Positions 332-29,233 are shown, numbered from the stretch's first letter. The stretch: 64,000 nucleotides of DNA from Auanema rhodensis (GCA_964057225.1 OZ059899.1:9238001-9302000); one strand, 5' to 3'. The notes: a model not told the origin generated them from the sequence alone. Numbers and translations: made by a program.

Positions 332-339
332 TTTTTTTT
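332..339 (+). terminator. Pol III oligo-T terminator (representative; a T run follows every tRNA copy)
   Basis: T8 starting 5 nt after tRNA 3' end. Confidence 0.85.
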
Positions 340-9043: not shown

Positions 9044-9116
9044 GGCCGCGTGGCGCAATGGATAACGCGTCTGCCTACGGAGCAGAAGATTGTAGGTTCG
9101 AATCCTGCCGTGGTCG
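9044..9116 (+). tRNA. tRNA-Arg(ACG)
   Basis: Consensus copy. Confidence 0.95.
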
Positions 9117-10013: not shown

Positions 10014-10086
10014 GGCCGCGTGGCGCAATGGATAACGCGTCTGCCTACGGAGCAGAAGATTGTAGGTTCGAATCCTGCCGTGGTCG
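10014..10086 (+). tRNA. tRNA-Arg(ACG)
   Basis: Consensus copy. Confidence 0.95.
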
Positions 10087-10984: not shown

Positions 10985-11057
10985 GGCCGCGTGGCGCAAT
11001 GGATAACGCGTCTGCCTACGGAGCAGAAGATTGTAGGTTCGAATCCTGCCGTGGTCG
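10985..11057 (+). tRNA. tRNA-Arg(ACG)
   Basis: Consensus copy. Confidence 0.95.
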
Positions 11058-11953
11058 TAAATTTTTTTTATTTCACTTGTCATTCATAAAAATCGAATTT
11101 ATTTTTTTCAATGATTTTTTTTTTCAATGTGTCATGAGAATTACACAGTTGAACAAAACGTTTTTTAAGAATTTTCTTTGTTGTCAACATATATATTTTC
11201 CTGGAATTCGAAAGCATTTGGGATGGAAATTAGAAAGAAAAGAACTAGTTTTTCCTACTTTAAAACAAACAATAAGAAATAAAATGAAAAAGATTGTTAG
11301 ATATCCAATTTAAACTTATACATTTACTTCGATAAAGAGCCTATTAGATTGAAATTTTATGTCTTACAGTTCTCCAACAGAACAGACTGATCCTGATTTC
11401 TCTATGATTACATAAAACGATATCGAATCTAGTGATATTGTAGAGAAATGTAATGTCAGCTTCATAGCTTTTCTCTTGATTTCTCTCATCACAATTGTCT
11501 TAGTTTTTTTCTCATAAGAGTTTCTGAAATCTCAGTTAAACAAGGCCGTATAAAATTTCCTGTAATTCGAAAGCATTTGGGATGGAATTTAGAAAGAAAA
11601 GAACTAGTTTTTCCTACTTTAAAACAAACAATAAGAAATAAAATGAAAAAGATTGTTAGATATCCAATTTAAACTTATACATTTACTTCGATAAAGAGCC
11701 TATTAGTTTGAAATTTTATGTCTTACAGTTCTCCAACAGAACAGACTGATCCTGATTTTTCTACGATTACATAAAACTCTCGTTTGATATAAAAAAAGGA
11801 GAGGAATAACGTTTCCAGGATGTCAAGGATATCGAATCTAGTGATATTGTAGAAAAATGTAATGTCAGCTCCATAGGTTTTCTCCTAATTTCTCTCATCA
11901 CAATTGTCTTAGTTTTTTTTCTCATAAGAGTTTCTGAAATCTTAGTTGAACAA

Positions 11954-12026
11954 GGCCGCGTGGCGCAATGGATAACGCGTCTGCCTACGGAGCAGAAGAT
12001 TGTAGGTTCGAATCCTGCCGTGGTCG
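11954..12026 (+). tRNA. tRNA-Arg(ACG)
   Basis: Consensus copy. Confidence 0.95.
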
Positions 12027-12924
12027 TAAATTTTTTTTATTTCACTTGTCATTCATAAAAATCGAATTTATTTTTTTCAATGATTTTTTTTTGCAATGTT
12101 TCATAAGAATTACACAGTTGAACAAAACGTTTTTTAAGAATTTTCTTTGTTGTCAACATATATATTTTCCTGGAATTCGAAAGCATTTGGGATGGAAATT
12201 AGAAAGAAAAGAACTAGTTTTTCCTACTTTAAAACAAACAATAAGAAATAAAATGAAAAAGATTGTTAGATATCCAATTTAAACTTATACATTTACTTCG
12301 ATAAAGAGCCTATTAGATTGAAATTTTATGTCTTACAGTTCTCCAACAGAACAGACTGATCCTGATTTCTCTATGATTACATAAAACAATATCGAATCTA
12401 GTGATATTGTAGAGAAATGTAATGTCAGCTTCATAGCTTTTCTCTTGATTTCTCTCATCACAATTGTCTTAGTTTTTTTCTCATAAGAGTTTCTGAAATC
12501 TCAGTTAAACAAGGCCGTATATAATTTCCTGGAATTCGAAAGCATTTGGGATGGAATTTAGAAAAAAAAAGAACTAGTTTTTCCTACTCTAAAACAAACA
12601 ATAAGAAATAAAATGAAAAAGATTGTTAGATATCCAATTTAAACTTATACATTTACTTCGATAAAGAGCCTATTAGTTTGAAATTTTATGTCTTACAGTT
12701 CTTCAACAGAACAGACTGATCCTGATTTTTCTACGATTACATAAAACTCTCGTTTGATATAAAAAAAGGAGAGGAATAACGTTTCCAGGATGTCAAGGAT
12801 ATCGAATCTAGTGATATTGTAGAAAAATGTAATGTCAGCTCCATAGGTTTTCTCCTAATTTCTCTCATCACAATTGTCTTAGTTTTTTTTTCTCATAAGA
12901 GTTTCTGAAATCTTAGTTGAACAA

Positions 12925-12997
12925 GGCCGCGTGGCGCAATGGATAACGCGTCTGCCTACGGAGCAGAAGATTGTAGGTTCGAATCCTGCCGTGGTCG
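12925..12997 (+). tRNA. tRNA-Arg(ACG)
   Basis: Consensus copy. Confidence 0.95.
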
Positions 12998-13894
12998 TAA
13001 ATTTTTTTTATTTCACTTGTCATTCATAAAAATCGAATTTATTTTTTTCAATGATTTTTTTTTTCAATGTGTCATGAGAATTACACAGTTGAACAAAACG
13101 TTTTTTAAGAATTTTCTTTGTTGTCAACATATATATTCTCCTGGAATTCGAAAGCATTTGGGATGGAAATTAGAAAGAAAAGAACTAGTTTTTCCTACTT
13201 TAAAACAAACAATAAGAAATAAAATGAAAAAGATTGTTAAATATCCAATTTAAACTTATACATTTACTTCGATAAAGAGCCTATTAGATTGAAATTTTAT
13301 GTCTTACAGTTCTCCAACAGAACAGACTGATCCTGATTTCTCTATGATTACATAAAACGATATCGAATCTAGTGATATTGTAGAGAAATGTAATGTCAGC
13401 TTCATAGCTTTTCTCTTGATTTCTCTCATCACAATTGTCTTAGTTTTTTTCTCATAAGAGTTTCTGAAATCTCAGTTAAACAAGGCCGTATAAAATTTCC
13501 TGTAATTCGAAAGCATTTGGGATGGAATTTAGAAAGAAAAGAACTAGTTTTTCCACCTTTAAAACAAACAATAAGAAATAAAATGAAAAAGATTGTTAGA
13601 TATCCAATTTAAACTTATACATTTACTTCGATAAAGAGCCTATTAGTTTGAAATTTTATGTCTTACAGTTCTCCAACAGAACAGACTGATCCTGATTTTT
13701 CTACGATTACATAAAACTCTCGTTTGATATAAAAAAAGGAGAGGAATAACGTTTCCAGGATGTCAAGGATATCGAATCTAGTGATATTGTAGAAAAATGT
13801 AATGTCAGCTCCATAGGTTTTCTCCTAATTTCTCTCATCACAATTGTCTTAGTTTTTTTTTCTCATAAGAGTTTCTGAAATCTTAGTTGAACAA

Positions 13895-13967
13895 GGCCGC
13901 GTGGCGCAATGGATAACGCGTCTGCCTACGGAGCAGAAGATTGTAGGTTCGAATCCTGCCGTGGTCG
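13895..13967 (+). tRNA. tRNA-Arg(ACG)
   Basis: Consensus copy. Confidence 0.95.
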
Positions 13968-14865
13968 TAAATTTTTTTTATTTCACTTGTCATTCATAAA
14001 AATCGAATTTATTTTTTTCAATGATTTTTTTTTGCAATGTTTCATAAGAATTACACAGTTGAACAAAACGTTTTTTAAGAATTTTCTTTGTTGTCAACAT
14101 ATATATTTTCCTGGAATTCGAAAGCATTTGGGATGGAAATTAGAAAGAAAAGAACTAGTTTTTCCTACTTTAAAACAAACAATAAGAAATAAAATGAAAA
14201 AGATTGTTAGATATCCAATTTAAACTTATACATTTACTTCGATAAAGAGCCTATTAGATTGAAATTTTATGTCTTACAGTTCTCCAACAGAACAGACTGA
14301 TCCTGATTTCTCTATGATTACATAAAACAATATCGAATCTAGTGATATTGTAGAGAAATGTAATGTCAGCTTCATAGCTTTTCTCTTGATTTCTCTCATC
14401 ACAATTGTCTTAGTTTTTTTCTCATAAGAGTTTCTGAAATCTCAGTTAAACAAGGCCGTATATAATTTCCTGGAATTCGAAAGCATTTGGGATGGAATTT
14501 AGAAAAAAAAAGAACTAGTTTTTCCTACTCTAAAACAAACAATAAGAAATAAAATGAAAAAGATTGTTAGATATCCAATTTAAACTTATACATTTACTTC
14601 GATAAAGAGCCTATTAGTTTGAAATTTTATGTCTTACAGTTCTTCAACAGAACAGACTGATCCTGATTTTTCTACGATTACATAAAACTCTCGTTTGATA
14701 TAAAAAAAGGAGAGGAATAACGTTTCCAGGATGTCAAGGATATCGAATCTAGTGATATTGTAGAAAAATGTAATGTCAGCTCCATAGGTTTTCTCCTAAT
14801 TTCTCTCATCACAATTGTCTTAGTTTTTTTTTCTCATAAGAGTTTCTGAAATCTTAGTTGAACAA

Positions 14866-14938
14866 GGCCGCGTGGCGCAATGGATAACGCGTCTGCCTAC
14901 GGAGCAGAAGATTGTAGGTTCGAATCCTGCCGTGGTCG
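14866..14938 (+). tRNA. tRNA-Arg(ACG)
   Basis: Consensus copy. Confidence 0.95.
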
Positions 14939-15835
14939 TAAATTTTTTTTATTTCACTTGTCATTCATAAAAATCGAATTTATTTTTTTCAATGATTTTT
15001 TTTTTCAATGTGTCATGAGAATTACACAGTTGAACGAAACGTTTTTTAAGAATTTTCTTTGTTGTCAACATATATATTCTCCTGGAATTCGAAAGCATTT
15101 GGGATGGAAATTAGAAAGAAAAGAACTAGTTTTTCCTACTTTAAAACAAACAATAAGAAATAAAATGAAAAAGATTGTTAAATATCCAATTTAAACTTAT
15201 ACATTTACTTCGATAAAGAGCCTATTAGATTGAAATTTTATGTCTTACAGTTCTCCAACAGAACAGACTGATCCTGATTTCTCTATGATTACATAAAACG
15301 ATATCGAATCTAGTGATATTGTAGAGAAATGTAATGTCAGCTTCATAGCTTTTCTCTTGATTTCTCTCATCACAATTGTCTTAGTTTTTTTCTCATAAGA
15401 GTTTCTGAAATCTCAGTTAAACAAGGCCGTATAAAATTTCCTGTAATTCGAAAGAATTTGGGATGGAATTTAGAAAGAAAAGAACTAGTTTTTCCACCTT
15501 TAAAACAAACAATAAGAAATAAAATGAAAAAGATTGTTAGATATCCAATTTAAACTTATACATTTACTTCGATAAAGAGCCTATTAGTTTGAAATTTTAT
15601 GTCTTACAGTTCTCCAACAGAACAGACTGATCCTGATTTTTCTACGATTACATAAAACTCTCGTTTGATATAAAAAAAGGAGAGGAATAACGTTTCCAGG
15701 ATGTCAAGGATATCGAATCTAGTGATATTGTAGAAAAATGTAATGTCAGCTCCATAGGTTTTCTCCTAATTTCTCTCATCACAATTGTCTTAGTTTTTTT
15801 TTCTCATAAGAGTTTCTGAAATCTTAGTTGAACAA

Positions 15836-15908
15836 GGCCGCGTGGCGCAATGGATAACGCGTCTGCCTACGGAGCAGAAGATTGTAGGTTCGAATCCTGC
15901 CGTGGTCG
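15836..15908 (+). tRNA. tRNA-Arg(ACG)
   Basis: Consensus copy. Confidence 0.95.
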
Positions 15909-16856
15909 TAAATTTTTTTCATTTCACTTGTCATTCATAAAAATCGAATTTATTTTTTTCAATGATTTTTTTTTGCAATGTGTCATAAAAATTACACAGT
16001 TGAACAAAACGTTTTTTAAGTGTTTTCTTTGTTGTCAACATATATATTTTCCTGGAATTCGAAAGCATTTAGGATGGAAATTAGAAAGAAAAGAACTAGT
16101 TTTTCCTACTTTAAAACAAACAATAAGAAATAAAATGAAAAAGATTGTTAGATATCCAATTTAAACTTATACATTTACTTCGATAAAGAGCCTATTAGAT
16201 TGAAATTTTATGTCTTACAGTTCTCCAACAGAACAGACTGATCCTGATTTCTCTATGATTACATAAAACTCCCGTTTGATATAAAAAAAGGAGAGGAATA
16301 ACGTTTCCAGGATGTCAAGGATATCGAATCTAGTGATATTGTAGAAAAATGTAATGTCAGCTCCATAGGTTTTCACCTAACTTCTCTCATCACAATTGTT
16401 TTAGTTTTTTTTCTCATAAGAGTTTCTGAAATCTTAGGTGAACAAGGCCGTATATAATTTCCTGGAATTCGAAAGCATTTGGGATGGAATTTAGAAAAAA
16501 AAGAACTAGTTTTTCCTACTTTAAAACAAACAATAAGAAATAAAATGAAAAAGATTGTTAGATATCCAATTTAAACTTATACATTTACTTCGATAAAGAG
16601 CCTATTAGTTTGAAATTTTATGTCTTACAGTTCTCCAACAGAACAGACTGATCCTGATTTTTCTACGATTACATAAAACTCTCGTTTGATATAAAAAAAG
16701 GAGAGGAATAACGTTTCCAGGATGTCAAGGATATCGAATCTAGTGATATTGTAGAAAAATGTAATGTCAGCTCCATAGGTTTTCTCCTAATTTCTCTCAT
16801 CACAATTGTCTTAGTTTTTTTTTCTCATAAGAGTTTCTGAAATCTTAGTTGAACAA

Positions 16857-16929
16857 GGCCGCGTGGCGCAATGGATAACGCGTCTGCCTACGGAGCAGAA
16901 GATTGTAGGTTCGAATCCTGCCGTGGTCG
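16857..16929 (+). tRNA. tRNA-Arg(ACG)
   Basis: Consensus copy. Confidence 0.95.
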
Positions 16930-17826
16930 TAAATTTTTTTTATTTCACTTGTCATTCATAAAAATCGAATTTATTTTTTTCAATGATTTTTTTTTGCAAT
17001 GTTTCATAAGAATTACACAGTTGAACAAAACGTTTTTTAAGAATTTTCTTTGTTGTCAACATATATATTTTCCTGGAATTCGAAAGCATTTGGGATGGAA
17101 ATTAGAAAGAAAAGAACTAGTTTTTCCTACTTTAAAACAAACAATAAGAAATAAAATGAAAAAGATTGTTAGATATCCAATTTAAACTTATACATTTACT
17201 TCGATAAAGAGCCTATTAGATTGAAATTTTATGTCTTACAGTTCTCCAACAGAACAGACTGATCCTGATTTCTCTATGATTACATAAAACAATATCGAAT
17301 CTAGTGATATTGTAGAGAAATGTAATGTCAGCTTCATAGCTTTTCTCTTGATTTCTCTCATCACAATTGTCTTAGTTTTTTTCTCATAAGAGTTTCTGAA
17401 ATCTCAGTTAAACAAGGCCGTATATAATTTCCTGGAATTCGAAAGCATTTGGGATGGAATTTAGAAAAAAAAGAACTAGTTTTTCCTACTTTAAAACAAA
17501 CAATAAGAAATAAAATGAAAAAGATTGTTAGATATCCAATTTAAACTTATACATTTACTTCGATAAAGAGCCTATTAGTTTGAAATTTTATGTCTTACAG
17601 TTCTTCAACAGAACAGACTGATCCTGATTTTTCTACGATTACATAAAACTCTCGTTTGATATAAAAAAAGGAGAGGAATAACGTTTCCAGGATGTCAAGG
17701 ATATCGAATCTAGTGATATTGTAGAAAAATGTAATGTCAGCTCCATAGGTTTTCTCCTAATTTCTCTCATCACAATTGTCTTAGTTTTTTTTTCTCATAA
17801 GAGTTTCTGAAATCTTAGTTGAACAA

Positions 17827-17899
17827 GGCCGCGTGGCGCAATGGATAACGCGTCTGCCTACGGAGCAGAAGATTGTAGGTTCGAATCCTGCCGTGGTCG
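17827..17899 (+). tRNA. tRNA-Arg(ACG)
   Basis: Consensus copy. Confidence 0.95.
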
Positions 17900-18437
17900 T
17901 AAATTTTTTTTATTTCACTTGTCATTCATAAAAATCGAATTTATTTTTTTCAATGATTTTTTTTTGCAATGTGTCATAAGAATTACACAGTTGAACAAAA
18001 CGTTTTTTAAGAATTTTCTTTGTTGTCAACATATATATTTTCCTGGAATTCGAAAGCATTTGGGATGGAAATTAGAAAGAAAAGAACTAGTTTTTCCTAC
18101 TTTAAAACAAACAATAAGAAATAAAATGAAAAAGATTGTTAGATATCCAATTTAAACTTATACATTTACTTCGATAAAGAGCCTATTAGATTGAAATTTT
18201 ATGTCTTACAGTTCTCCAACAGAACAGACTGATCCTGATTTCTCTATGATTACATAAAACTCCCGTTTTATATGAAAAAAGGAGAGGAATAACGTTTCCA
18301 GGATGTCAAGGATATCGAATCTAGTGATATTATAGAGAAATGTAATGTCAGCTTCATAGCTTTTCTCTTGATTTCTCTCATCACAATTGTCTTAGTTTTT
18401 TTTCCTCATAAGAGTTTCTGAAATCTTAGTTGAACAA

Positions 18438-18510
18438 GGCCGCGTGGCGCAATGGATAACGCGTCTGCCTACGGAGCAGAAGATTGTAGGTTCGATTCCT
18501 GCCGTGGTCG
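18438..18510 (+). tRNA. tRNA-Arg(ACG), A59T variant
   Basis: T loop GGTTCGATTCC, still B-box compatible. Confidence 0.93.
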
Positions 18511-19385
18511 TAAATTTTTTTTATTTCACTTGTCATTCATAAAAATCGAATTTATTTTTTTCAATGATTTTTTTTTGCAATGTGTCATAAGAATTTCACA
18601 GTTTAACAAAACGTTTTTTAAGAAGTTTTTTTGTTGTCAACATATATATTTTGCTGGAATTCGGAAGCATTTGGGATGGAAATTAGAAAGAAAAGAACTA
18701 GTTTTTCCTACTTTAAAACAAACAATAAGAAATAAAATGAAAAAGATTGTTAGATATCCAATTTGAACTTATACATTTACTTCGATAAAGAGCCTATTAG
18801 ATTGAAATTTTATGTCTTACAGTTCTCCAACAGAACAGACTGATCCTGATTTTTCTACGATTACATAAAACTCTCGTTTGATATAAAAAAAGGAGAGGAA
18901 TAACGTTTCCAGGATGTCAAGGATATCGAATCTAGTGATATTGTAGAAAAATGTAATGTCAGCTCCATAGGTTTTCACCTAACTTCTCTCATCACAATTG
19001 TTTTAGTTTTTTTTCTCATAAGAGTTTCTGAAATCTTAGGTGAACAAGGCCGTATATAATTTCCTGGAATTCGAAAGCATTTGGGATGGAATTTAGAAAA
19101 AAAAGAACTAGTTTTTCCTACTTTAAAACAAACAATAAGAAATAAAATGAAAAAGATTGTTAGATATCCAATTTAAACTTATACATTTACTTCGATAAAG
19201 AGCCTATTAGTTCGAAATTTTATGTCTTACAGTTCTCCAACAGAACAGACTGATCCTGATTTTTCTACGATTACATAAAACTCTCGTTTGATATAAAAAA
19301 AGGAGAGGAATAACGTTTCCAGGATGTCAAGGATATCGAATCTAGTGATATTGTAGAAAAATGTAATGTCAGCTCTATAGGTTTT

Positions 19386-19390
19386 CTCCT
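19386..19390 (+). other. Target-site duplication CTCCT (left copy; right copy 29161-29165)
   Basis: Uninterrupted units read GTTTTCTCCTAATTT; here CTCCT flanks both LTRs. Confidence 0.95.
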
Positions 19391-19457
19391 TGTCGCGATA
19401 AGCGAGTGAGTTTGTATAAATTTTATCTTCAACAATTGTTTTATTTGTCTCTCCTGT

Positions 19458-19490
<33 letters not shown>

Positions 19491-19743
19491 TCTTTCTTCT
19501 TTCTTCTAACTTCCTAAGTAATTTTTATCCATACCACATGTTGTGTTATACATGTGGCATGACTAACTCTTTGTTTCAGGCTGACGACCGCCCACGAGAA
19601 GAGACCAGTCTTACATTTTCAACGTTCGCAGTCAGTGATTTTATTCCGTGCTTGTCTTGTTAATTCATCAATAAACCCTTTTCTACATATTCGCTTTGTG
19701 TTTTACTTCCAACCATACTATACACTTGTGGTATATCGCCACA
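19391..19743 (+). repeat. 5' LTR (353 bp)
   Basis: Begins TGTCGCGATA, ends TATCGCCACA (9/10 terminal inverted repeat); direct repeat of 28802-29160; (CT)13 at 19465-19490. Confidence 0.97.
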
Positions 19744-19746
19744 AAT

Positions 19747-19758
19747 TGGTGCATCGGC
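19747..19758 (+). promoter_or_regulatory. Primer-binding site, complementary to tRNA-Gly(GCC) 3' end
   Basis: TGGTGCATCGGC 3 nt after the LTR; reverse complement of ...GCCGATGCACCA, the invertebrate tRNA-Gly(GCC) 3' end as recalled; does not match the array's tRNA-Arg (would be TGGCGACCACGG). Confidence 0.85.
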
Positions 19759-20031
19759 TAGTTTAGATCTTAGCCGCTTTAAGTCCCGCGTGGCAGGTGA
19801 GATACAAGTCGAACCAAGCGTGTTTGTGCAAAAAACATACTTAATAAAAATCGTGGCGATCATAAGTCCACGTCAAGTCACACCAAACAGACTTGAACAA
19901 TAAGCAAACTCTGAAATTAGAAACAGAGGTTTCAATTTCCTTACGTTCACATATACTGTGATCACCAAACAAACAAAGAAAAAAGAAAACAAAAAAGGAA
20001 TATAAGCATTATTCCTACATCTACAACAAAA

Positions 20032-21377
20032 ATGTCACTCCTTTTTGTCAATCATATCAAACAATCTAACCAGTTTCTTGGAGAACTGCTTACACGATAC
20101 GAGATGGAAGTGAAGGACCTTCCTGGTATTCTGGTAGATTGCGACTTCCACACTGAGGAAGAAGAGGAAACCCTCTCTTGCCTTATCATTCGCTGGACAA
20201 AAGTCCAACACCAATTCAAAGAATCGTTGAAAAATCATCAAGATAACAAGAAAAAATTCCAAAAATTTTAAGAAGCATCAAACAAAACGCTTCGTAAAGC
20301 ATTAGACGAACAGTACATCGCCTTCACATCCGATGAAGACTTTGAACCCAACATTAAAAAGGTTCAAAACGCCATTATTGAGCTTGACGAACACATCATG
20401 AAAGCCGAACGCATACTTAGAAAGCTGAGAAAAACGCTTCATAAGAATGAATCTGAGCACAACAGCAATTGCTCAACAGAAAACAATGAAACAGAAAACA
20501 AATCGAATGATCAATTTCTGGAAATTATCAAGTCATTCCTACACATCCAACAAACTAGCATCCAAAAACCAGCGATGTCGCTACCTACATTTGATGGCAA
20601 ACCAGAGAACTTCAAATCATTCTGGGGCCGTTTTGATAGACTTGTTCATGATAATGAACAGTTTACAACCTTAGAAAAGGTAAACCTACTCTGTGAAAGC
20701 CTCAAAGGCGATTCACAAATAGCAATCAGAGGAATAGAACCCTCTGCTCAAAATTATGAGCTCATGCGTGAAGCATTAGTTTCTGAATTTGGAGACTATT
20801 CGTCGGATATCAACTCTCTTTTAACACAACTACGTAATTTGAGATTTGCAAGCAATAATGCAAAATCATGTAAAGAAACATTTGGGGAAACCAAGGCACT
20901 TATCAGGCAAATTGAAGCAGCCGGAGCTACAGTATCCCGCGAAATGTGTACCGCGATGATTCTCAACAAATTCCCATACCACATCGTGGAAGACATTCTA
21001 ATTTATCCAAACAACTACCATTCCACTAAAGAAATGCTGACAGCTGTAGACCACAAAATCTATTCCTTTTTTCTAAAAGAACAAACAAGAAATAGTCATG
21101 AACAAAAGTTTCGAAATCCCAAAGAGAATGTCACATCTGTAGCACATAAAGAAAACTCCGTAGAACAACGGAAAACCCAAACTGGCCATGTGTTTTCTGC
21201 GACTCATCCGAACATCGCTTTTATCATTGCACCACATTTGAAACACCAGAGAAAAGAAGACACCGCATCCGCGGAAAGGCCATCTGTTGGATTTGTTTTT
21301 CCGAGAAACACAAAAGTTCCGAATGCAGAAAACAAAAATGTCGAAATTGCCAAGGAGACCATAATTCCTCCTTGTGC
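20032..21377 (+). pseudogene. gag: BEL/Pao gag, disrupted (in-frame TAA 20269-20271; -1 frame change between ~21150 and 21183)
   Basis: AAAATG start; ORFs 20032-20271 and 20398-21456 are in the same frame with open codons between; LPTFDGKPENFKSFWGRF...EKVNLLCESLKG = DUF1759-type capsid; Zn knuckles CVFC-H-C/CWIC-H-C/CRNC-H-C (21189-21377) lie in the pol frame. Confidence 0.85.
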
Positions 21378-24300
21378 TCACAAGGAAGAAAAAACGTGCA
21401 AAATATCCAAAAAGATAAAGAAACTCCCACAATTAAAAAAGATCAGGCTTTACTGATCACCACAGAAGAATTATTGAATAAAAAAACAACAGAATATAAA
21501 CAAGAATCTGACACTAATAATCGAATCCCTACTGAGGCACTTAATGCACCAGTATCGCTTAATCACATTGCCGACACACATAATATTGAAGAAAGTCAAG
21601 TAATATTACGAACAGCAATGGCGAACATATACAACCACAATAGTAAAAAATATGAGCAAGTACGCATGCTCATAGATGAAGGATCCATGAGATCTTTTAT
21701 ATCCAAGGACTTATCCACTAAGTTAGGATTGCCCATCCTTGGTTCTCAAAAGAAAACCTTTTACGGTATCGGAGCATTGTCCGAAACGCACGAAGTTCAG
21801 GACGTAAAGGTAATTATTGGAACCTCAAGTGGATCCCTTATCGTAACAAAACTATTCACCAAACCCATGTTAACCACACCCATACGTTGTCCAAAACTAT
21901 CTAAAGAAGACTTGAAATTTATAAAGACAAGAAAAATAAAATTAGCCAATCCACAAACAAACGGAGAATCATTTACTCCGGATATACTGATAGGTATGGA
22001 TAGATACAAACTGTTCATGCATTTAAACGAAGAAACCGAACTCCCCTCACGTATGAGATTGAAAAATTCGGTATTCGGCCACATGATACATGGAGAAGCT
22101 CCTCTTCCCGATGATAATACACAACAAGAAGTAATATTATGCTCTACAGTAGAAGAAATAACAAAAGAAACCTCTCATAAAGAACTCCTCACTAATCTGT
22201 TTGAACTGGATTCTATCGGCATCAATACAGAAAATGCCAACGCAGACCGCACTATTGATTACTATGAAGAATACTCAAAAGATATAAAAATTGAGAACAA
22301 CCGCATTATTGCACCGTTCCCGTTAAAAAATAACTTCAAAAATCTTAAAAACAACAAAATGCCCGCGTACCATAGATTCGTATCCCTATGGCGAAAGTTA
22401 CTGCACAATCCAGAAATGCTCTCACACTATACTACAACCATTGAAAGTTACCTCAAAGATAACATTGTCGAACAAATTCCCAACAATCACCAGGAGCCTT
22501 TAGAGTTTTATATGCCCCACCATGGGGTTTGGAAGCCCAGCAAGGCTAACCCTCTCAGAATCGTTTTTGACGCCTCCGCTAAACAGAAAGACAGCCCATC
22601 GTTGAATGAGATAATACACACAGGACGATCATTTATCACATATATACACGACATCATGATCTCCTGCAGAACAAGACCAATATTAATAACATGCGATATC
22701 AAAGCCGCATTTTTACAAATACAACTGACAGAGAATCACAAAAATCTATGCAAATTCTTTTGGATAAAAAACAAAGAATACCCAATATCTCACAATAATA
22801 TCATAACCCTTCGATTCAACAGATTACCGTTCGGTATCACTGCATCCCCCAGCGTATTGAACATGGGCATAAAATGGTTCTTAGAATCAAAAGTAGACAA
22901 CCCATTAGCTATGGAAATACTGAACAACTTATACGTTGACAATATCATTCTTACAGCAAATACAACAGCAGAAGCTATAAAGAAATGTAAAGAAACCCAA
23001 AAACTATTTACAGAAATAAACATGCATGTTCGCGAATTCTTGTCAAACGACGAACAAGTAATACAGAACCTTCCTGAAGAAGACAGATATCCGAACATGA
23101 CAACCAAAATACTTGGCATATCTTTTAATAAAGAACACGACTCCTTCATTATCCCAATAAAAATAACAACGACTCACACAAGTTACACCAAGAGAATTCT
23201 ACTCAGTCAGCTACACTCAATATTTGATCCCATTGGATTAGCAGCACCATTACTGTTACCTCTGAAACTTATCTTGCGAGAAATCATAAACACAAAATTA
23301 TCATGGGACCAACCCATTGAATCAGATAATATCAAACAATGGGAACAACATATTAATCACATTAACAATCAGCAATTGACCATGAAAAGATATTTTAAAT
23401 TCTCTGAACATAAAACACAGTTATGGGTCTTTGCTGACGCAAGCAACCAAGCCATGGCCGCATGTTCATATTTCCAAACAAACGAGCAGATTAGTTCTCT
23501 GCTCAACGGTAAATCCCGCGTAGCACCCAAAAATAAGACCACAATTCCTCGATTAGAATTATTAGCCATCCGCTTAGCAGTACGAATGGCATTAGCTATT
23601 GTAACCATATGCCCGAAAGTGGCAAAAGTCAACATTGTAAGCGATAGCAACATCGCGCTATCATGGATTATTTCTCTAAAATCCCTCCCACTGTTCATTA
23701 AAAATCAAACAAACATTATAAATAAACAGCTACACCAAATCAAACAAGTATGTTGCAATGTAGAATTACATCATGTACAAACCTCGTACAATACTGCAGA
23801 CATCGGATCCCGAGGTGCAGACATCGAGAAACTACAAGATTCCGACTGGATAAAGGGTCCACATTGGTTAACTAAACTTTCCGCTCATAACCCTCTGACA
23901 TCATTCGGCTCGCCTAAGAACTCTAACAGGAATAACGCAGAATCAGAATCGGAGCATCACAATGTGGTCCACATAATTATAGACAATCTTCCAACCGATG
24001 ATATTTGGAACATTCGTGAAAACTATGATGATGTGATCAAAACAATGACAACCGTAGGAAAATTATTCAAAAAATGGTTTCTTAAAGTCCATCCTAACAA
24101 CGCCAACAAGTTGCAAAAAATAAAACATCTCACATCAACAGACACGAATACTGTTGAAGACATCAACATAATTGAAAAAATTTTGATCAGTAACAGCCAA
24201 TCTAATATGAGCCTCGATGAGCTACAGCAAAGAAATATAAATTTAAAATTCTTCAAAGATACATGGGACATTTATCGCGTAAGAAGTCGTGTACAAAATA

Positions 24301-27300
24301 CTCTTCTTCCCGAAGAGACAAAAAACCCTATATTCCTTCTCAAAACAAACCCCATAGTTAAAAAACTGATCAACAAAATACACAAAGATAATAATCATCA
24401 AGGCAAAAATTTCACGCTTATTCAACTCAGACAAAAGTTCTATATACCAAAAATAACCGGAGTCATTAAGCAAACATTGAAAAACTGTGTGACATGTAAA
24501 AGATTTCAATCACATCCTTATGAATTACCAGATATGCCATCGCTACCAAAAGACAGAGCAATTCTTACAAGAGCATTCTTTTCAACAGGGTGTGATCTTA
24601 TGGGCCCCTTCACCCTTCGAAATGGGTCTAAAGTCCATATTTGTCTGTTTACATGCATGACAACTAGAGCGGTTCACTTAGAGGTAGTCACCAATCAATC
24701 CACAGTTGCCTTTATGAATGCATTTAATAGATTTATTTCACGCAGAGGTACTCCAGAAATAATGCGCAGTGACTGCGCAGGAAACTTTATTCTGAGCTCA
24801 AAAATATTAGAAACCCTTGAAAAAACCTCGGATTACAATGAAAGTAGCATACTAAACACATTAGCTCAAAGAAAAATTAAATGGATATACAACACTCCGC
24901 TATCTCCTTGGAAAGGAGGTTGTTGGGAACGCTTAGTAGGTGTCACCAAATCATCCCTCAAAAAATGCTTCGTTCCTAGTCAAATGTCACTAGATGATTT
25001 ACACACAGCTATTGTAAAAATAGAAGCCATAATTAATACACGCCCACTCACTCATCCACACCCAGATAATTTAGATGCTTTACCCATAAGACCAATTGAT
25101 TTTTTAACATCAGCAATAAAGTTTTCATTACCAGAAAACAATGATAACACTCATATATTCGATATTCACAGCGATATCCAAACGATTCAATCGACAGAAC
25201 AAGCGCTAGAAGCACTTCAGTTATCAGAAGACTCAGCGTCTAAATTCTGGACACGTTTCCAGGAGGAGTATCTAACTAGTTTAAAAGACATTTTCAAACA
25301 TAAAAACAAGAGAAAAAATCACACAAATCTCTTTCCTCACAAGGATGAAATAGTAATAATACAAAACGACATGTCGCCACGAGGAACATGGAAACTAGGT
25401 CGCATTATTGAAACAATTACTAGTTCAGATGGCAACATACGTTCAGCAAAAGTTGCAACAAGCAACGGAAACATAATTACTCGATCCATCAATCAGCTCT
25501 ATCCACTAGAGATAAGATGCAACACTAGCAACAACAAAATCATAGAAGACAACTCACACATAGTCCAAGAAAATAATAGCTCAACAGATAGAATAGCACA
25601 TACTGATACCGTATTAGACAACATACACTCCGATCATCATATAGAACATACAGATGAAACAATACATGAGAACAATAACATAAATGATAGCAACCATAAT
25701 TACGATATTGCATATGAATCAGACAACTCTCAACATGATAATACATACACTCCAGAAACAGAGAATAATGAGGATGCAACAAACGATCGACCTCAAAATA
25801 AAACAAAACTATCATCAGTGAAAACAGCAAAATATACAGAACAAGATAAGGTCACTGAGAAGGAAAATATAAAAGCCTTCCCACTAAAAATGTCCTATGC
25901 CACACACCAAAGAAAAAATAAAATAAACCCAAAAATAGCAGCTGACATAATGAAAGCCCTTTCATTACCGATTATAATTACTTCGACATATGCCGAAGAA
26001 ATCAATAGTTGCAAGGACTCTAACATGTTCACCACAAAACTTATAGCGAATCCTCATTGCTCCCCAGAAATGGCAACATGGACAGTGCTAATAACCATTA
26101 TGGCAGTTACCCTCATAGTCTCTTGTCTATGCCGCATGGGCTACAGCCAATATAGATATAAGACATGGTCCAAAAACACTCAAACCATGCTCAACATCAT
26201 GAAATTAAAACATAAAACAATCTCCGAACAAGAAGATCATGAAACTGATCAAAAAATAACAGAAGACCACAATGATACGTTGCAATTAAAACAAACGAAC
26301 ACACAAGACGCTAATATTGTGGATCATGAAACCTTTCAAAAGCATATTTACCCTATTTTAAACCATACGAGAAAGCCACCAAAATTCTCTCTCTTTACTA
26401 GAGGGTCGCAAACATCTTTACCATCGTTACTGGCAATCATCTTGGCTTTATGTATTGGAAGCTGCAGTTCATGTTCCGATGTTCATGTTCAACACTTCGT
26501 TAACATACGATGCGATGACAACTTAGCTTGTTATCACGAATACAGTCAAGATATCATATTTTCTCCCGGAACAAAACAATTATGCATTACCATAACGCAT
26601 TCTAATCATGAAATTGGTCAATTTAAAATAACTAAACTATATACTGAACATGTCTGCCAAAAGAATACTAGATACTTCACTAGACAGACAACCGTCAACA
26701 TATTGAGCATATTACGATGCCGTCACCGGGGCTCGTGTGACGGAACATGTGAAACTAACTCGCTCCATAATAAAATCGAGGAACTACAACCATATACGTT
26801 CCCTTCACAATCAGGTTGCTTCACATCGTCAGCGAGATTTTACACATGTCCTATGATTTGGACAGATCCTTGTCTTTTCTACAAAATAGAGCATATACCC
26901 GTCACTGAGGAAGTATACGAAGTCTATACTTGTGATAGTTGGTCCACCCAAACCGTATTTAATATAGAAACAACATTACTCCAGCAGAAAAATAATTACA
27001 ATATCACTCTACAACCTTACACGAAAAATCGTGAACAACTTTTCAATATAACAACGTTATCACAATCACAACCTCCTCCAGAAATGTACACAAAATTATT
27101 TTTTTCCTCCAAAGAAAACACGTACATTACGGATATACACACAAAGGGAATAATTCAATGTGCAACAGAGGAAGCCGCATTAAAACATTTTAATAACTGT
27201 ACAGTATCCTCATTCTGCCCTTGCACATTCAATAGATTTGATGAAATAAAATGTAGGTGTGATACCCCTACTTTTGAAAAAATGTCCAATACATCAGACA

Positions 27301-27962
27301 TAAAATCTCCTAACCAAAACTTTAAAACTAAAGATAACACGTTATCATTCTCTACGAATTTAGACGAAAATTTAGTTACGGTCGATTCATCCCTATTCTT
27401 AAACTCAGTGATTTTCTCCAACAATTTGCCTTGCGCACCTGCCCTGACAAAACTATCAGGTTGCTACTCCTGCGGGCAGGGTGCATTCGCAGAATTCCAA
27501 TGCCTTACGGCAGAAGAAACATGGATTTCTATCGAATGTCAAAAAGAAGTATTCATGATAAAATGCTCTCCAAAAGTAGCAATCACAAAAGTAACAATGA
27601 AAAGAGAAAATTCTCAGATTGATGAATTATGCTATACCACATGCGACAATAAAAAAATTAAGATCATTATTAAAGGAATATTACATCACATAGCAAGCAT
27701 AGATGAAATAAACGAAAGTGACTCAAGTAAGGGTACAGAATCCAAATCCATTGACTTCGCTCCAATCTTCAAGTTAATTTTATCAAAGTTGGGAATCATA
27801 TTGATAGGCGTTGCAATAACCGCCACCATAGGATATGTGGCATGTACACCCATCATGTACTGTGTAGTTTTGAATACAGTCTTAACCACACAATGGATAG
27901 CTACCAGGATATTCACACTGTGGATAAAATCAAAAGCCTTATTTCGGGATCAAAGATTTTAA
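21150..27962 (+). CDS. pol: Pol-Env polyprotein frame (Zn knuckles, aspartic protease, RT, RNase H, integrase, DUF5641-type C-terminus, env); open from 21150, ORF track start 21372 is an internal TTG
   Basis: LIDEGS (21675), RLPFG, YVDN (22932-22943), FADAS/TIPRLELLA/SDS/NTADIGSRG, H-H-CVTC, D(24594)-D(24771)-E(24927), PRGTWKLGRI...RSINQLYPLE. Confidence 0.95.
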   Translation, partial: RKLRRTTENPNWPCVFCDSSEHRFYHCTTFETPEKRRHRIRGKAICWICFSEKHKSSECRKQKCRNCQGDHNSSLCSQGRKNVQNIQKDKETPTIKKDQALLITTEELLNKKTTEYKQESDTNNRIPTEALNAPVSLNHIADTHNIEESQVILRTAMANIYNHNSKKYEQVRMLIDEGSMRSFISKDLSTKLGLPILGSQKKTFYGIGALSETHEVQDVKVIIGTSSGSLIVTKLFTKPMLTTPIRCPKLSKEDLKFIKTRKIKLANPQTNGESFTPDILIGMDRYKLFMHLNEETELPSRMRLKNSVFGHMIHGEAPLPDDNTQQEVILCSTVEEITKETSHKELLTNLFELDSIGINTENANADRTIDYYEEYSKDIKIENNRIIAPFPLKNNFKNLKNNKMPAYHRFVSLWRKLLHNPEMLSHYTTTIESYLKDNIVEQIPNNHQEPLEFYMPHHGVWKPSKANPLRIVFDASAKQKDSPSLNEIIHTGRSFITYIHDIMISCRTRPILITCDIKAAFLQIQLTENHKNLCKFFWIKNKEYPISHNNIITLRFNRLPFGITASPSVLNMGIKWFLESKVDNPLAMEILNNLYVDNIILTANTTAEAIKKCKETQKLFTEINMHVREFLSNDEQVIQNLPEEDRYPNMTTKILGISFNKEHDSFIIPIKITTTHTSYTKRILLSQLHSIFDPIGLAAPLLLPLKLILREIINTKLSWDQPIESDNIKQWEQHINHINNQQLTMKRYFKFSEHKTQLWVFADASNQAMAACSYFQTNEQISSLLNGKSRVAPKNKTTIPRLELLAIRLAVRMALAIVTICPKVAKVNIVSDSNIALSWIISLKSLPLFIKNQTNIINKQLHQIKQVCCNVELHHVQTSYNTADIGSRGADIEKLQDSDWIKGPHWLTKLSAHNPLTSFGSPKNSNRNNAESESEHHNVVHIIIDNLPTDDIWNIRENYDDVIKTMTTVGKLFKKWFLKVHPNNANKLQKIKHLTSTDTNTVEDINIIEKILISNSQSNMSLDELQQRNINLKFFKDTWDIYRVRSRVQNTLLPEETKNPIFLLKTNPIVKKLINKIHKDNNHQGKNFTLIQLRQKFYIPKITGVIKQTLKNCVTCKRFQSHPYELPDMPSLPKDRAILTRAFFSTGCDLMGPFTLRNGSKVHICLFTCMTTRAVHLEVVTNQSTVAFMNAFNRFISRRGTPEIMRSDCAGNFILSSKILETLEKTSDYNESSILNTLAQRKIKWIYNTPLSPWKGGCWERLVGVTKSSLKKCFVPSQMSLDDLHTAIVKIEAIINTRPLTHPHPDNLDALPIRPIDFLTSAIKFSLPENNDNTHIFDIHSDIQTIQSTEQALEALQLSEDSASKFWTRFQEEYLTSLKDIFKHKNKRKNHTNLFPHKDEIVIIQNDMSPRGTWKLGRIIETITSSDGNIRSAKVATSNGNIITRSINQLYPLEIRCNTSNNKIIEDNSHIVQENNSSTDRIAHTDTVLDNIHSDHHIEHTDETIHENNNINDSNHNYDIAYESDNSQHDNTYTPETENNEDATNDRPQNKTKLSSVKTAKYTEQDKVTEKENIKAFPLKMSYATHQRKNKINPKIAADIMKALSLPIIITSTYAEEINSCKDSNMFTTKLIANPHCSPEMATWTVLITIMAVTLIVSCLCRMGYSQYRYKTWSKNTQTMLNIMKLKHKTISEQEDHETDQKITEDHNDTLQLKQTNTQDANIVDHETFQKHIYPILNHTRKPPKFSLFTRGSQTSLPSLLAIILALCIGSCSSCSDVHVQHFVNIRCDDNLACYHEYSQDIIFSPGTKQLCITITHSNHEIGQFKITKLYTEHVCQKNTRYFTRQTTVNILSILRCRHRGSCDGTCETNSLHNKIEELQPYTFPSQSGCFTSSARFYTCPMIWTDPCLFYKIEHIPVTEEVYEVYTCDSWSTQTVFNIETTLLQQKNNYNITLQPYTKNREQLFNITTLSQSQPPPEMYTKLFFSSKENTYITDIHTKGIIQCATEEAALKHFNNCTVSSFCPCTFNRFDEIKCRCDTPTFEKMSNTSDIKSPNQNFKTKDNTLSFSTNLDENLVTVDSSLFLNSVIFSNNLPCAPALTKLSGCYSCGQGAFAEFQCLTAEETWISIECQKEVFMIKCSPKVAITKVTMKRENSQIDELCYTTCDNKKIKIIIKGILHHIASIDEINESDSSKGTESKSIDFAPIFKLILSKLGIILIGVAITATIGYVACTPIMYCVVLNTVLTTQWIATRIFTLWIKSKALFRDQRF
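26472..27962 (+). other. env: Phlebovirus G2/Gc-like class II fusion glycoprotein domain (~496 aa) of env
   Basis: Hydrophobic signal LLAIILALCIGSCSS before CSD; Cys-rich motifs RYFTR, RCRHRGSC, CLFYK, YEVYTC.SW, LSGCYSCGQGA; C-terminal TM LGIILIGVAITATIGYVAC; family known in nematode BEL elements. Confidence 0.85.
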
Positions 27963-28266
27963 AAGCATAAGAGAAGAATTTCTTGTGGAGATTAAATTTA
28001 AAATTAAAAATTGAAATAATAATGAAACAAAAGAAAAAGAAAGCATTATGTACGAATATAACCATTGTAATAAAACAATATCATTGTTTTTCTTTCTTTT
28101 CAATTTATGGTAGTATCAAGTTTCTTTTATCCAACTCAGTTACATAACACATAACCTTTTGTACAGGCTCTAAAATTCATTGTATCTGTAACAAGATAAC
28201 CTAAACACACCATTGTACAATAAACTAATAGATGTTAATCAGCGTTTAAAGTCCAGATGTGAACAT

Positions 28267-28275
28267 GTATATAAG
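28267..28275 (+). promoter_or_regulatory. Putative internal TATA box GTATATAAG for accessory ORF
   Basis: Fits nematode extended TATA GTATAWWAG, ~35-43 nt upstream of ATG 28310. Confidence 0.4.
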
Positions 28276-28309
28276 GATGCAGCTCATGTTTCTCCTATAT
28301 TCCATGAAA

Positions 28310-28771
28310 ATGGAAGATATTGTCTCGAATATAATTGAGAATGCTTCCTTTGAGGAAGAGCTCAAAAAATATTCCCATCTACCTAACACTGCTGCCAATC
28401 TGAGGCAACTAATTGTGCTTGAAAAGAGGCTCTACGAGCACCTAGCTAGCGCGGTGAACCATCTATCCGAACGACTGGACAATATTCAACATTCGTTAAA
28501 TCTGAAACTAGACAATTTGACCATTCAGACTGCTCCTAAAGCTTCATGTGTATTCTGCAATAAACCGACAGCTGATGGGCACCGTACTGCGGCCTGTCCG
28601 ATTTATCCTTCCTCACCGGAACGCACTCTCCGTCTTCATGAACTGGGGTTATGCATCAGATGTTTGAATCAAAAACATCCAGCGATTTGCGAGGTATCCT
28701 GCTATAGATGTAAGGCGGATACGCATCATGGAGTGGTTTGTGGTGATATAAAACGTAAAAGACCTTTGTAG
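28310..28771 (+). CDS. Accessory protein downstream of env: coiled coil + triple CCHC zinc knuckle + basic C-terminus (likely start 28310 or 28304; frame open from 28259)
   Basis: CVFC-x6-H-x4-C, CIRC-x4-H-x3-C, CYRC-x4-HH-x3-C; heptad-like LASAVNHLSERLDNIQHSL; KRKRP end; AAAATG context. Confidence 0.8.
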   Translation: MEDIVSNIIENASFEEELKKYSHLPNTAANLRQLIVLEKRLYEHLASAVNHLSERLDNIQHSLNLKLDNLTIQTAPKASCVFCNKPTADGHRTAACPIYPSSPERTLRLHELGLCIRCLNQKHPAICEVSCYRCKADTHHGVVCGDIKRKRPL

Positions 28772-28801
28772 GCCTTCTTCTCATTCCCGCATTGCCGGGA
28801 G

Positions 28802-28868
28802 TGTCGCGATAAGCGAGTGAGTTTGTATAAATTTTATCTTCAACAATTGTTTTATTTGTCTCTCCTGT

Positions 28869-28910
<42 letters not shown>

Positions 28911-29160
28911 TTCTTCTTTCTTCTAACTTCCTAAGTAATTTTTATCCATACCACATGTTGTGTTATACATGTGGCATGACTAACTCTTTGTTTCAGGCTG
29001 ACGACCGCCCACGAGAAGAGACCAGTCTTACATTTTCAACGTTCGCAGTCAGTGATTTTATTCCGTGCTTGTCTTGTTAATTCATCAATAAACCCTTTTC
29101 TACATATTCGCTTTGTGTTTTACTTCCAACCATACTATACACTTGTGGTATATCGCCACA
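28802..29160 (+). repeat. 3' LTR (359 bp)
   Basis: Matches 5' LTR except (CT)16 at 28876-28907; followed by TSD. Confidence 0.97.
29087..29092 (+). promoter_or_regulatory. Polyadenylation signal AATAAA in 3' LTR (copy at 19670-19675)
   Basis: AATAAA followed by T/GT-rich sequence ~70 nt from LTR end. Confidence 0.6.
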
Positions 29161-29233
29161 CTCCTAATTTCTCTCATCACAATTGTCTTAGTTTTTTTTT
29201 CTCATAAGAGTTTCTGAAATCTTAGTTGAACAA

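What the first reader, a model, noticed from the sequence alone, without database searches (positions are those of the whole stretch)
28259..28771. Accessory gene after env: second triple zinc knuckle with coiled coil, NES-like and NLS-like motifs (Rev-like candidate)
Seen: intact ~153-aa ORF between env and 3' LTR with a knuckle array paralogous to but diverged from the Gag one (CVFC..H..C; R..R...LC..C..H..C; C..C..H..C). It also has amphipathic heptads, LNLKLDNLTI (28496-28525; fits L-x3-L-x2-L-x-I CRM1 NES) and terminal KRKRP. Known: extra 3' ORFs have been noted in some nematode BEL elements, but I know of no assigned function. Inference: an oligomerising, shuttling RNA-binding protein that exports or protects unspliced genomic RNA (fits the LTR intron and leader donor), a trans-acting nucleocapsid, or an anti-silencing factor. 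NES patterns are common in coiled coils, so the motif alone is weak.
Basis: partly seen in the sequence, partly recalled or inferred. Interest (0 to 1): 0.8.

Follow-up and report, generated by a model that had tools for sequence, protein, structure and literature searches.

The report
Fourth gene in a nematode retroelement
A young, seemingly intact retrovirus-like element in a nematode genome carries, after its envelope gene, a small gene for a zinc-knuckle protein; unannotated relatives of it occur in many nematodes, which points to an undescribed accessory protein.

Summary
An LTR element (19391-29160, Belpaoviridae type with a phlebovirus-like env) carries an intact ORF at 28259-28771. It is 153 codons from the best-context ATG at 28310, lies 296 nt after env and ends 30 nt before the 3' LTR. 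It encodes an acidic N-end, a long heptad-patterned helix, three CCHC knuckles and a terminal KRKR cluster. The knuckle array is homologous to the BEL/Pao Gag nucleocapsid (hhalign 98.4%, E 6.5e-15; 26% identity to the element's own Gag array); the helical half is not. The ORF is not an orphan: an exhaustive HMMER search found 62 relatives. The best are small proteins of the same build from Auanema, Diploscapter, Heterorhabditis and at least ten strongylid species, all labelled hypothetical and without a Pfam family. Two Ostertagia gene models fuse a phlebovirus-G2 env part to this domain, so the gene order recurs elsewhere. The terminal basic cluster and the heptad helix are conserved. The NES-like motif is not (2 of 36 against 2.9 expected). 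No match to Rev, Rex or any solved or predicted viral structure was found. This is a real, undescribed fourth gene derived from the nucleocapsid. A nuclear role in RNA handling (like CERV or Rev) is the best guess but is unproven.

The parts
19386..19390 (.). Target-site duplication, left copy (CTCCT)
   Evidence: The flanks of the two LTRs share CTCCT. The host flanks joined with one copy of CTCCT match 69 places in the surrounding satellite.
19391..19743 (+). 5' LTR with TG..CA ends. It holds TATAAA at 19415 and a (CT)n run.
   Evidence: Self-BLAST and alignment with the 3' LTR: identical except for 6 nt of (CT)n length.
19744..20397 (+). Leader. A primer-binding-site-like TGG starts at 19747.
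   Evidence: Read from the sequence. It does not match the 3' end of the neighbouring tRNA-Arg(ACG) (9 of 18).
20398..21456 (+). gag ORF (capsid-type DUF1759 domain). One frame change (-1 direction) separates it from the Gag knuckle array. This is either a programmed shift or a single frameshift. The count is 1; the place is not given.
   Evidence: Pfam DUF1759, E 5e-17. The frames of the ORF and of the knuckles differ.
21189..21377 (+). Gag nucleocapsid triple CCHC array, read in the pol frame
   Evidence: Motif scan. BLASTP against the ORF3 array, E 4e-7.
21372..27962 (+). Uninterrupted pol-env ORF of 2196 codons as listed. Domains: Pao peptidase A17 23187-23648, integrase H2C2 24357-24512, DUF5641 25218-25508, Phlebovirus_G2 26472-27350, Phlebo_G2_C 27432-27872. 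The RT motif YVDN is present.
27963..28258 (+). AT-rich spacer (about 27% G+C) between env and ORF3. The best acceptor-like site ends at 28167, and two very short upstream ORFs start at 28232 and 28257.
28259..28771 (+). ORF3, the finding. It is stop-free from 28259; in-frame ATGs lie at 28265, 28277, 28286, 28304 and 28310. The likely protein is 153 aa, starting at 28310.
   Evidence: Family alignment.
28313..28531 (+). ORF3 N-half: an acidic start and two predicted helices (residues 2-21 and 28-74 of the 153-aa protein) with a heptad pattern.
   Evidence: AlphaFold2, mean pLDDT 84.6. Heptad score z 3.5. Only chance-level coiled-coil matches in PDB.
28547..28741 (+). ORF3 triple CCHC knuckle array (28547-28597, 28652-28690, 28700-28741), homologous to the BEL/Pao Gag nucleocapsid
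   Evidence: Block-mean pLDDT is 91-96 over residues 91-140, which cover most of the array.
28751..28765 (+). Terminal basic cluster KRKRP, one residue before the C-terminal residue (NLS-like). It is conserved in the family as a cluster of the type K-[KR]-x-[KR] or K-[KR]-[KR], 0-3 residues from the C-end.
28772..28801 (+). 30-nt stretch between the ORF3 stop codon and the 3' LTR. It ends in a short purine run, which is where the polypurine tract should be.
28802..29160 (+). 3' LTR. It holds a donor-like GTGAGTTTG at 28817, an acceptor-like site ending at 28996 and AATAAA at 29087.
29161..29165 (.). Target-site duplication, right copy (CTCCT)

Best explanation
ORF3 is a genuine fourth gene of this belpaovirus-type element. 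It is a member of an undescribed family of small proteins (about 110-260 aa) carried by retroelements of rhabditine nematodes.

Shown:
- The C-half is a duplicated, diverged copy of the BEL/Pao Gag nucleocapsid triple zinc-knuckle array, so it is a domain that binds single-stranded nucleic acid.
- The N-half is a separate helical module with a heptad pattern.
- The protein ends in a cluster of the type K-[KR]-x-[KR] or K-[KR]-[KR].
- All three features recur across the family despite only 24-38% identity.

Inferred:
- The helix makes the protein oligomeric.
- The terminal basic cluster takes it into the nucleus.
- There it binds the element's own unspliced genomic RNA through nucleocapsid-type recognition and promotes that RNA's export or protects it. 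That would be the role CERV plays for Cer1 and Rev plays for lentiviruses, reached independently from a different starting protein.
- Expression must come from a subgenomic (cis- or trans-spliced) mRNA, which I could not demonstrate.

My confidence that it is a real, selected, nucleocapsid-derived accessory gene is about 0.9. My confidence in the nuclear RNA-handling mechanism is about 0.35, and that is the figure given in the confidence field.
For: - Intact ORF, far longer than chance allows, inside an element whose LTRs show no substitutions and whose pol-env ORF is uninterrupted.
- 62 relatives at E<=1e-3 among 1.84 billion representatives. The top hits are small proteins of the same build; Gag proteins rank lower and match over the knuckles only.
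- Named sources: Auanema, Diploscapter, Heterorhabditis, Ostertagia, Trichostrongylus, Ancylostoma (3 species), Nippostrongylus, Heligmosomoides, Haemonchus (2 species) and Cylicocyclus.
- All twelve zinc ligands are invariant or at least 90% conserved, with five invariant in the 33-sequence alignment and eight in the 23-sequence one.
- hhalign of the family against a BEL/Pao Gag set: 98.4% probability, E 6.5e-15, knuckles only.
- A basic cluster lies within the last 12 residues in 22 of 36 members.
- The heptad score exceeds shuffles in most members, mean z 2.9.
- AlphaFold2 gives a confident model, mean pLDDT 84.6.
- Two Ostertagia gene models join a Phlebovirus_G2 env part to this domain, so the env-then-ORF3 order recurs.
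- Precedent: CERV of Cer1 is needed for genomic RNA export and has a leucine zipper, a KRKK motif and a Cys-rich loop (PMC10309623).
Against: - The NES-like motif is not conserved (2 of 36 against 2.9 expected).
- There is no sequence or fold match to Rev, Rex, CERV or any solved or predicted viral regulator.
- No transcript, splice donor-acceptor pair or trans-splice site for ORF3 was established. The only strict donor-like sites lie in the LTRs.
- A basic tail next to zinc knuckles can simply add to nucleic-acid binding, so nuclear targeting is a guess.
- Atlas virus proper leaves only about 175 nt of non-coding sequence (my arithmetic from PMC9094657), so elements of this kind can do without such a gene.
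- ORF3's codon third-position composition differs from the rest of the element (p 2e-6). This is unexplained.
Confidence: 0.35

Rival explanations
1. Trans-acting nucleocapsid or RNA chaperone. ORF3 is made in bulk, coats or anneals the genomic RNA in the cytoplasm or inside particles, and so supplements the Gag nucleocapsid. In this element the Gag knuckles lie in the pol frame, so they may be present only in the minor read-through product.
For: The knuckle array is homologous to the Gag nucleocapsid. The C-half is basic, pI 9.1. The DUF1759 part of gag and the Gag knuckles are in different frames.
Against: The strongylid hosts of this family also carry elements whose continuous Gag-Pol-Env already includes the nucleocapsid (PMC9094657; bioRxiv 10.64898/2026.03.22.711591), although I did not establish whether the ORF3-bearing elements are of that kind. 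The conserved extreme C-terminal K-[KR]-x-[KR] cluster and the acidic N-end are not needed for a plain nucleocapsid. No capsid-binding part is evident.
Confidence: 0.2
2. A nuclear factor with a different task. ORF3 could be a transactivator of the LTR, built from an acidic N-end, an oligomerising helix, a zinc domain and an NLS. Or it could be a cofactor that accompanies the reverse-transcribed DNA into the nucleus.
For: The N-half is acidic (pI 5.4) and the C-half basic. The terminal basic cluster is conserved. A helix is predicted.
Against: CCHC knuckles of the nucleocapsid type typically bind single-stranded RNA or DNA rather than duplex promoters (general knowledge). There is no match to any transcription-factor family.
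Confidence: 0.12
3. An antagonist. ORF3 could be a nucleocapsid-like decoy that interferes with host small-RNA silencing or with competing elements, by sequestering RNA or by mixing into their assemblies.
For: It is Gag-derived and multi-copy in many genomes. Nematode LTR elements are known targets of nuclear RNAi (abstracts of PMC4714518 and PMC4367959, seen).
Against: No feature specific to such a role was found. This is speculation that rests on the same architecture as the other readings.
Confidence: 0.1
4. A passenger or relic. ORF3 could be a captured or duplicated fragment with no present function that stays open only because the insertion is very young.
For: The LTRs are identical, so there has been little time for decay. 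ORF3's codon composition is foreign to the element. Atlas virus lacks room for such an ORF (PMC9094657).
Against: The same three-part build persists at 24-38% identity across free-living and parasitic rhabditine nematodes, with the zinc ligands invariant or at least 90% conserved and the end motif conserved. The same position after env is seen in Ostertagia.
Confidence: 0.05

Closest known systems
Nucleocapsid domain of BEL/Pao (Belpaoviridae) Gag
   Same: Three CCHC knuckles in the same order and spacing. Profile-profile match at 98.4% probability, E 6.5e-15. 26% identity to the element's own Gag array.
   Different: ORF3 is a stand-alone ORF after env, not part of Gag. It has no DUF1759 capsid part. 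Its first knuckle is stretched to 7 residues between CX2C and H, and to 8-9 in most relatives. It adds an N-terminal heptad helix and a terminal basic cluster.
CERV of the C. elegans Cer1 retrotransposon (PMC10309623)
   Same: An accessory protein of a nematode LTR element. [quoted passage not shown] It is the best functional precedent.
   Different: CERV is 517 aa, comes from a 5-exon mRNA that shares its start with gag, and has H, M and G domains in a Metaviridae element. None of the named relatives of ORF3 is from Caenorhabditis, but many hits carry no source name. I made no direct comparison because no comparator was fetched.
Rev and Rex type export adaptors of complex retroviruses (named only)
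   Same: Small size; a basic nucleic-acid-binding and NLS-like part; a helix fit for oligomerisation; a position in the 3' part of the genome.
   Different: No sequence or fold match was returned. RNA binding here would be through zinc knuckles rather than an arginine-rich helix. The NES-like motif is not conserved.
Atlas virus and the Atlas clade of nematode belpaoviruses (PMC9094657; bioRxiv 10.64898/2026.03.22.711591)
   Same: At the level of the element: a pol-env fusion, a phlebovirus Gc-like env, the YVDN RT motif, three Gag knuckles and identical LTRs.
   Different: Neither paper mentions a gene after env. The published size of Atlas virus leaves about 175 nt of non-coding sequence, too little for one. 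Here gag and its knuckles are in two frames.
Extra ORFs captured by LTR retrotransposons of bdelloid rotifers (PMC5408684; title and abstract start only, seen)
   Same: A precedent that LTR elements of invertebrates carry additional ORFs beyond the usual ones.
   Different: A different host group. I read only the title and the start of the abstract, so I cannot say what those ORFs encode.

Membership tests
BEL/Pao Gag nucleocapsid (triple CCHC array) | Three CCHC knuckles, collinear and homologous with the Gag arrays | tested here: met
BEL/Pao Gag nucleocapsid (triple CCHC array) | Lies at the C-end of a Gag that has the DUF1759 capsid part, upstream of the protease | tested here: not met
   ORF3 is a separate ORF after env. 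It has no DUF1759 match. Its N-half has no counterpart in gag (hhalign probability 1%).
Unnamed family of small nematode proteins found here (helix + triple knuckle + basic end) | Significant full-protein similarity to members | tested here: met
   E 2e-22 to 1e-8 for the top small hits. A profile search recovers further members.
Unnamed family of small nematode proteins found here (helix + triple knuckle + basic end) | Same build: heptad helix before the knuckles, stretched first knuckle, and a basic cluster (K-[KR]-x-[KR] or K-[KR]-[KR]) 0-3 residues from the C-end | tested here: met
Unnamed family of small nematode proteins found here (helix + triple knuckle + basic end) | Location after a phlebovirus-like env inside an LTR element | tested here: inconclusive
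   Met in the window. Implied by two Ostertagia env-fusion gene models. The loci of the other members were not fetched.
Rev / Rex type export adaptors | Homology in sequence or fold | tested here: not met
   No such hit in PDB by sequence, in PDB by fold or in BFVD.
Rev / Rex type export adaptors | Leucine-rich NES | tested here: inconclusive
   The pattern is present in the window but occurs in only 2 of 36 relatives against 2.9 expected by shuffling. Binding to the export receptor is not testable here.
Rev / Rex type export adaptors | Made from a spliced subgenomic mRNA; shuttles; binds a structured element in unspliced RNA | not testable with these tools
   There are no transcript data. Only weak splice-site candidates were found.
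CERV (Cer1) | Multi-exon protein that shares its start with Gag and has H, M and G domains (PMC10309623) | tested here: not met
   ORF3 is a single ORF of 153-170 codons with a different domain set. No direct comparison was made, as no comparator was fetched.
Pfam zf-CCHC and other curated zinc-finger families | Score above the family's curated threshold | tested here: not met
   No family is shared by more than one of the 33 members, and none comes near its threshold.
Belpaoviridae element with phlebovirus-like env (Atlas-like), at the level of the element | Pao peptidase, integrase, Phlebovirus_G2 env fused to pol, YVDN motif, three Gag knuckles, LTRs with a target-site duplication | tested here: met

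The most novel reading that the evidence does not exclude
A subset of nematode belpaoviruses are 'complex' retroelements. They carry a conserved fourth gene, born from a duplicate of their own nucleocapsid, whose product enters the nucleus as an oligomer and picks out the unspliced genomic RNA for export or protection. That would be an independent invention of the Rev/CERV solution, and one spread across free-living and livestock- and human-parasitic nematodes.
Probability: 0.25. Interest if true: 0.8.

Novelty: new variant of a known kind. Interest (0 to 1): 0.62.

Why it matters
[quoted passage not shown] A conserved fourth gene would change the genome map of this family.

It would also give the many 'hypothetical' CCHC proteins annotated in hookworm, Haemonchus, Ostertagia and other genomes an origin: they would be retroelement genes rather than host genes.

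Finally, it offers a second, independent case besides CERV for asking how invertebrate retroelements handle unspliced RNA. The protein is small and is confidently modelled, so it suits structural and localisation work.

Tried and rejected
- Word-index protein search with ORF3 alone: no hit. Only the exhaustive HMMER search found the family.
- Pfam on ORF3 and on 33 family members: nothing shared.
- PDB by sequence, with the single protein and with the profile: only chance-level coiled-coil or HA2 matches.
- Foldseek against PDB and BFVD: best E 2.5 and 0.33, with weak Lin28 and other CCHC matches only.
- Full-length BLASTP of ORF3 against the gag ORF: nothing, explained by the frame of the Gag knuckles.
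- hhalign of the family against the gag ORF, looking for an origin of the helical half: probability 1%.
- NJ tree of 52 knuckle arrays, to see whether ORF3 arrays form a clade apart from Gag arrays: unresolved. The deep nodes have no support, and the pairing of the window's array with P0013 has 51%.
- NES conservation: rejected.
- Strict splice-site patterns for an ORF3 mRNA: the only donor-like sites are in the LTRs, and there is one moderate acceptor-like site.
- Primer-binding site against the neighbouring tRNA-Arg(ACG): no match.
- 'Chance ORF': rejected. 'Nested second element': rejected, because there are no extra LTRs or duplications inside 19391-29160.

Left out:
- I did not fetch any genomic locus of the relatives (look-up, pattern or accession).
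- I did not fetch any comparator virus or protein.
- I tested no joined-exon model, because no tool predicted an intron.

Slips, stated as required:
- Twice in my private working I wrote sequence from memory: an illustrative Pao-type knuckle string and part of a tRNA.
- In one search I joined the two host-satellite flanks (not element sequence) to test the empty site.
- Notebook entry 4 gives 19746 for the start of the TGG after the 5' LTR; the correct position is 19747.

Full report
**What is there.** The window is almost entirely a tandem satellite of about 970 bp (sub-units of 359 and 611 bp) that carries tRNA-Arg(ACG) genes. One LTR element is inserted in it at 19391-29160. Its LTRs (19391-19743 and 28802-29160) are identical except for 6 nt of a (CT)n run. 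They end in TG..CA and are flanked by a 5-bp duplication, CTCCT. The two host flanks joined with one copy of the duplication match 69 other places in the satellite, so this is a clean insertion.

Inside the element lie:
- a gag ORF with the DUF1759 capsid-type domain (20398-21456);
- a triple CCHC array (21189-21377);
- an uninterrupted pol-env ORF (to 27962) with Pao peptidase A17, integrase H2C2, DUF5641, Phlebovirus_G2 and Phlebo_G2_C domains.

The RT has the YVDN motif reported for nematode belpaoviruses (PMC9094657). The element is therefore a Belpaoviridae member of the kind with a phlebovirus-like env, and it is very young. Breaks: at most one. The DUF1759 part of gag and the Gag knuckles are in different frames (a -1 change), which may be a programmed shift or a frameshift. 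I did not resolve this and I give no place. pol-env and ORF3 have no breaks.

**The observation.** ORF3 is stop-free over 28259-28771. It is 153 codons from the best-context ATG at 28310, starts 296 nt after the env stop and ends 30 nt before the 3' LTR. No shuffle of the region reached this length (0 of 2000). The layout of knuckles and linkers matches the Gag array. BLASTP between the two arrays gives 26% identity over 72 residues, E 4e-7.

**Relatives.** Pfam, PDB and the word-index search left the protein open, so I ran the exhaustive HMMER search. It found 62 proteins at E<=1e-3. The best hits (E 2e-22 to about 1e-8) are almost all small proteins with the same build: a variable acidic start, a helix, a motif of the type R-[ST]-x-P-[KR]-S just before the first knuckle, a stretched first knuckle, two more knuckles, and a K-[KR]-x-[KR] cluster 0-3 residues from the end. 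Gag and Gag-Pol proteins with DUF1759 rank lower and match over the knuckles only.

The named members come from:
- Auanema sp. JU1783 (closest, 38% identity), Diploscapter pachys and Heterorhabditis bacteriophora;
- the strongylids Ostertagia, Trichostrongylus, Ancylostoma ceylanicum, A. duodenale, A. caninum, Nippostrongylus, Heligmosomoides, Haemonchus placei, H. contortus and Cylicocyclus.

All are labelled 'hypothetical' or carry automatic domain names, and none has a Pfam family. Several occur per genome, as expected for element-borne genes. Two Ostertagia gene models (389 and 487 aa) consist of a Phlebovirus_G2 env part followed by this domain. This shows the same env-then-ORF3 order in a distant host.

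**Descent.** Profile-profile comparison of the family with a set of BEL/Pao Gag proteins gives 98.4% probability and E 6.5e-15 over 70 columns, which is exactly the knuckle array. The helical half has no counterpart in the element's gag ORF. A tree of 52 arrays is unresolved. I therefore cannot say whether there was one old duplication or several. ORF3's third-codon-position composition differs sharply from gag, the Gag knuckles and pol-env (chi-square 29.3, p 2e-6; no equal-sized window in pol-env comes close). That hints at a later acquisition from another lineage or at a different expression regime, but it is unexplained.

**Structure.** With the family alignment, AlphaFold2 gives mean pLDDT 84.6. 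It predicts helices at residues 2-21 and 28-74, and block-mean pLDDT is 91-96 over residues 91-140, which cover most of the knuckle array. Foldseek against PDB and BFVD returns nothing below E 0.3. The weak hits are Lin28-type and other CCHC domains. A crude heptad score is above shuffles in most members (mean z 2.9). The N-half is acidic (pI 5.4) and the C-half basic (pI 9.1).

The NES-like pattern is not conserved: class 1a is found in 2 of 36 members against 2.9 expected from shuffles. The excess of 'any class' patterns (21 against 10.5) is what an amphipathic helix gives. The basic end is conserved (22 of 36 within the last 12 residues, in register). No Rev-, Rex- or Tat-like protein came back from any search. 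I had HIV-1 Rev, HTLV Rex and Cer1 CERV in mind, fetched none of them and wrote no letters of them.

CERV (PMC10309623) shows that a nematode LTR element can encode an export factor with a zipper, a basic motif and a Cys-rich part. It is a precedent for the role, not a relative.

The ICTV profile lists only gag, pol and env for the family (PMC8742986). The two Atlas papers mention no gene after env. Atlas virus itself (9204 nt, two 271-nt LTRs, 2828 codons) has no room for one, so the gene is not universal. I found no prior description of this gene in six full-text searches and seven papers opened.

**Mechanism.** The following are shown: a conserved, nucleocapsid-derived zinc-knuckle domain, a conserved heptad helix, a conserved basic end, and the position after env. 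The following are inferred: oligomerisation, nuclear entry, and binding of the element's unspliced RNA with export or protection. I put this at 0.35. The rivals are a trans-acting nucleocapsid (0.2), another nuclear task (0.12), an antagonist of silencing or of competing elements (0.1) and a relic (0.05).

The route of expression is open. The only strict donor-like sites are in the LTRs (19406 and 28817). The best acceptor-like site before ORF3 ends at 28167. Two tiny upstream ORFs precede the first in-frame ATG.

I did not fetch the genomic loci of the relatives by look-up, pattern or accession. Synteny beyond the two fusion models and dN/dS are therefore untested. No exon-joined model was tested because no intron was predicted.

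Noticed in passing
window 1-19390 and 29161-64000: The rest of the window is a tandem satellite of about 970 bp (359 + 611 bp sub-units, some of 410 bp) with a tRNA-Arg(ACG) gene per unit. The element sits in one unit with a clean 5-bp duplication. ICTV says belpaoviruses prime from tRNA-Arg or tRNA-Gly, but the sequence after the 5' LTR does not match this tRNA-Arg (9 of 18).
   Followed up: partly
window 19406-19585 and 28817-28996: Each LTR holds a donor-like GTGAGTTTG, overlapping the TATAAA box, and about 180 nt further on a nematode-type acceptor-like TTTGTTTCAG. The acceptor could also serve trans-splicing. I did not test it.
   Followed up: no
window 20398-21456 and 21189-21377: The DUF1759 part of gag and the Gag zinc knuckles are in different frames (one -1 change). 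If the shift is programmed, the main Gag product would lack the knuckles. I did not resolve this, and I give no place.
   Followed up: partly
window 28310-28768: ORF3's third-codon-position composition (less A, more G and T) differs from every other coding part of the element (p 2e-6). No equal-sized window in pol-env is as deviant.
   Followed up: partly
proteins P0005 (439 aa) and P0037 (264 aa), unnamed, from Logan assemblies: These relatives carry three and two tandem triple-knuckle arrays respectively in one protein. P0005 also has a long knuckle-free stretch between its second and third arrays. This is an expanded version of the same domain.
   Followed up: no
protein P0039 (Ancylostoma caninum, 143 aa) against window 26040-26195: Its N-end resembles the transmembrane stretch at the start of the window's env part (E 9e-4) and is joined directly to an ORF3-like knuckle domain. 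This could be a splice form (env start joined to ORF3), a deletion derivative or a gene-model artefact.
   Followed up: partly
window 19391-19743 against 28802-29160: The two LTRs differ only by three CT units of a microsatellite. There are no substitutions in about 353 nt, so the insertion is very recent.
   Followed up: yes
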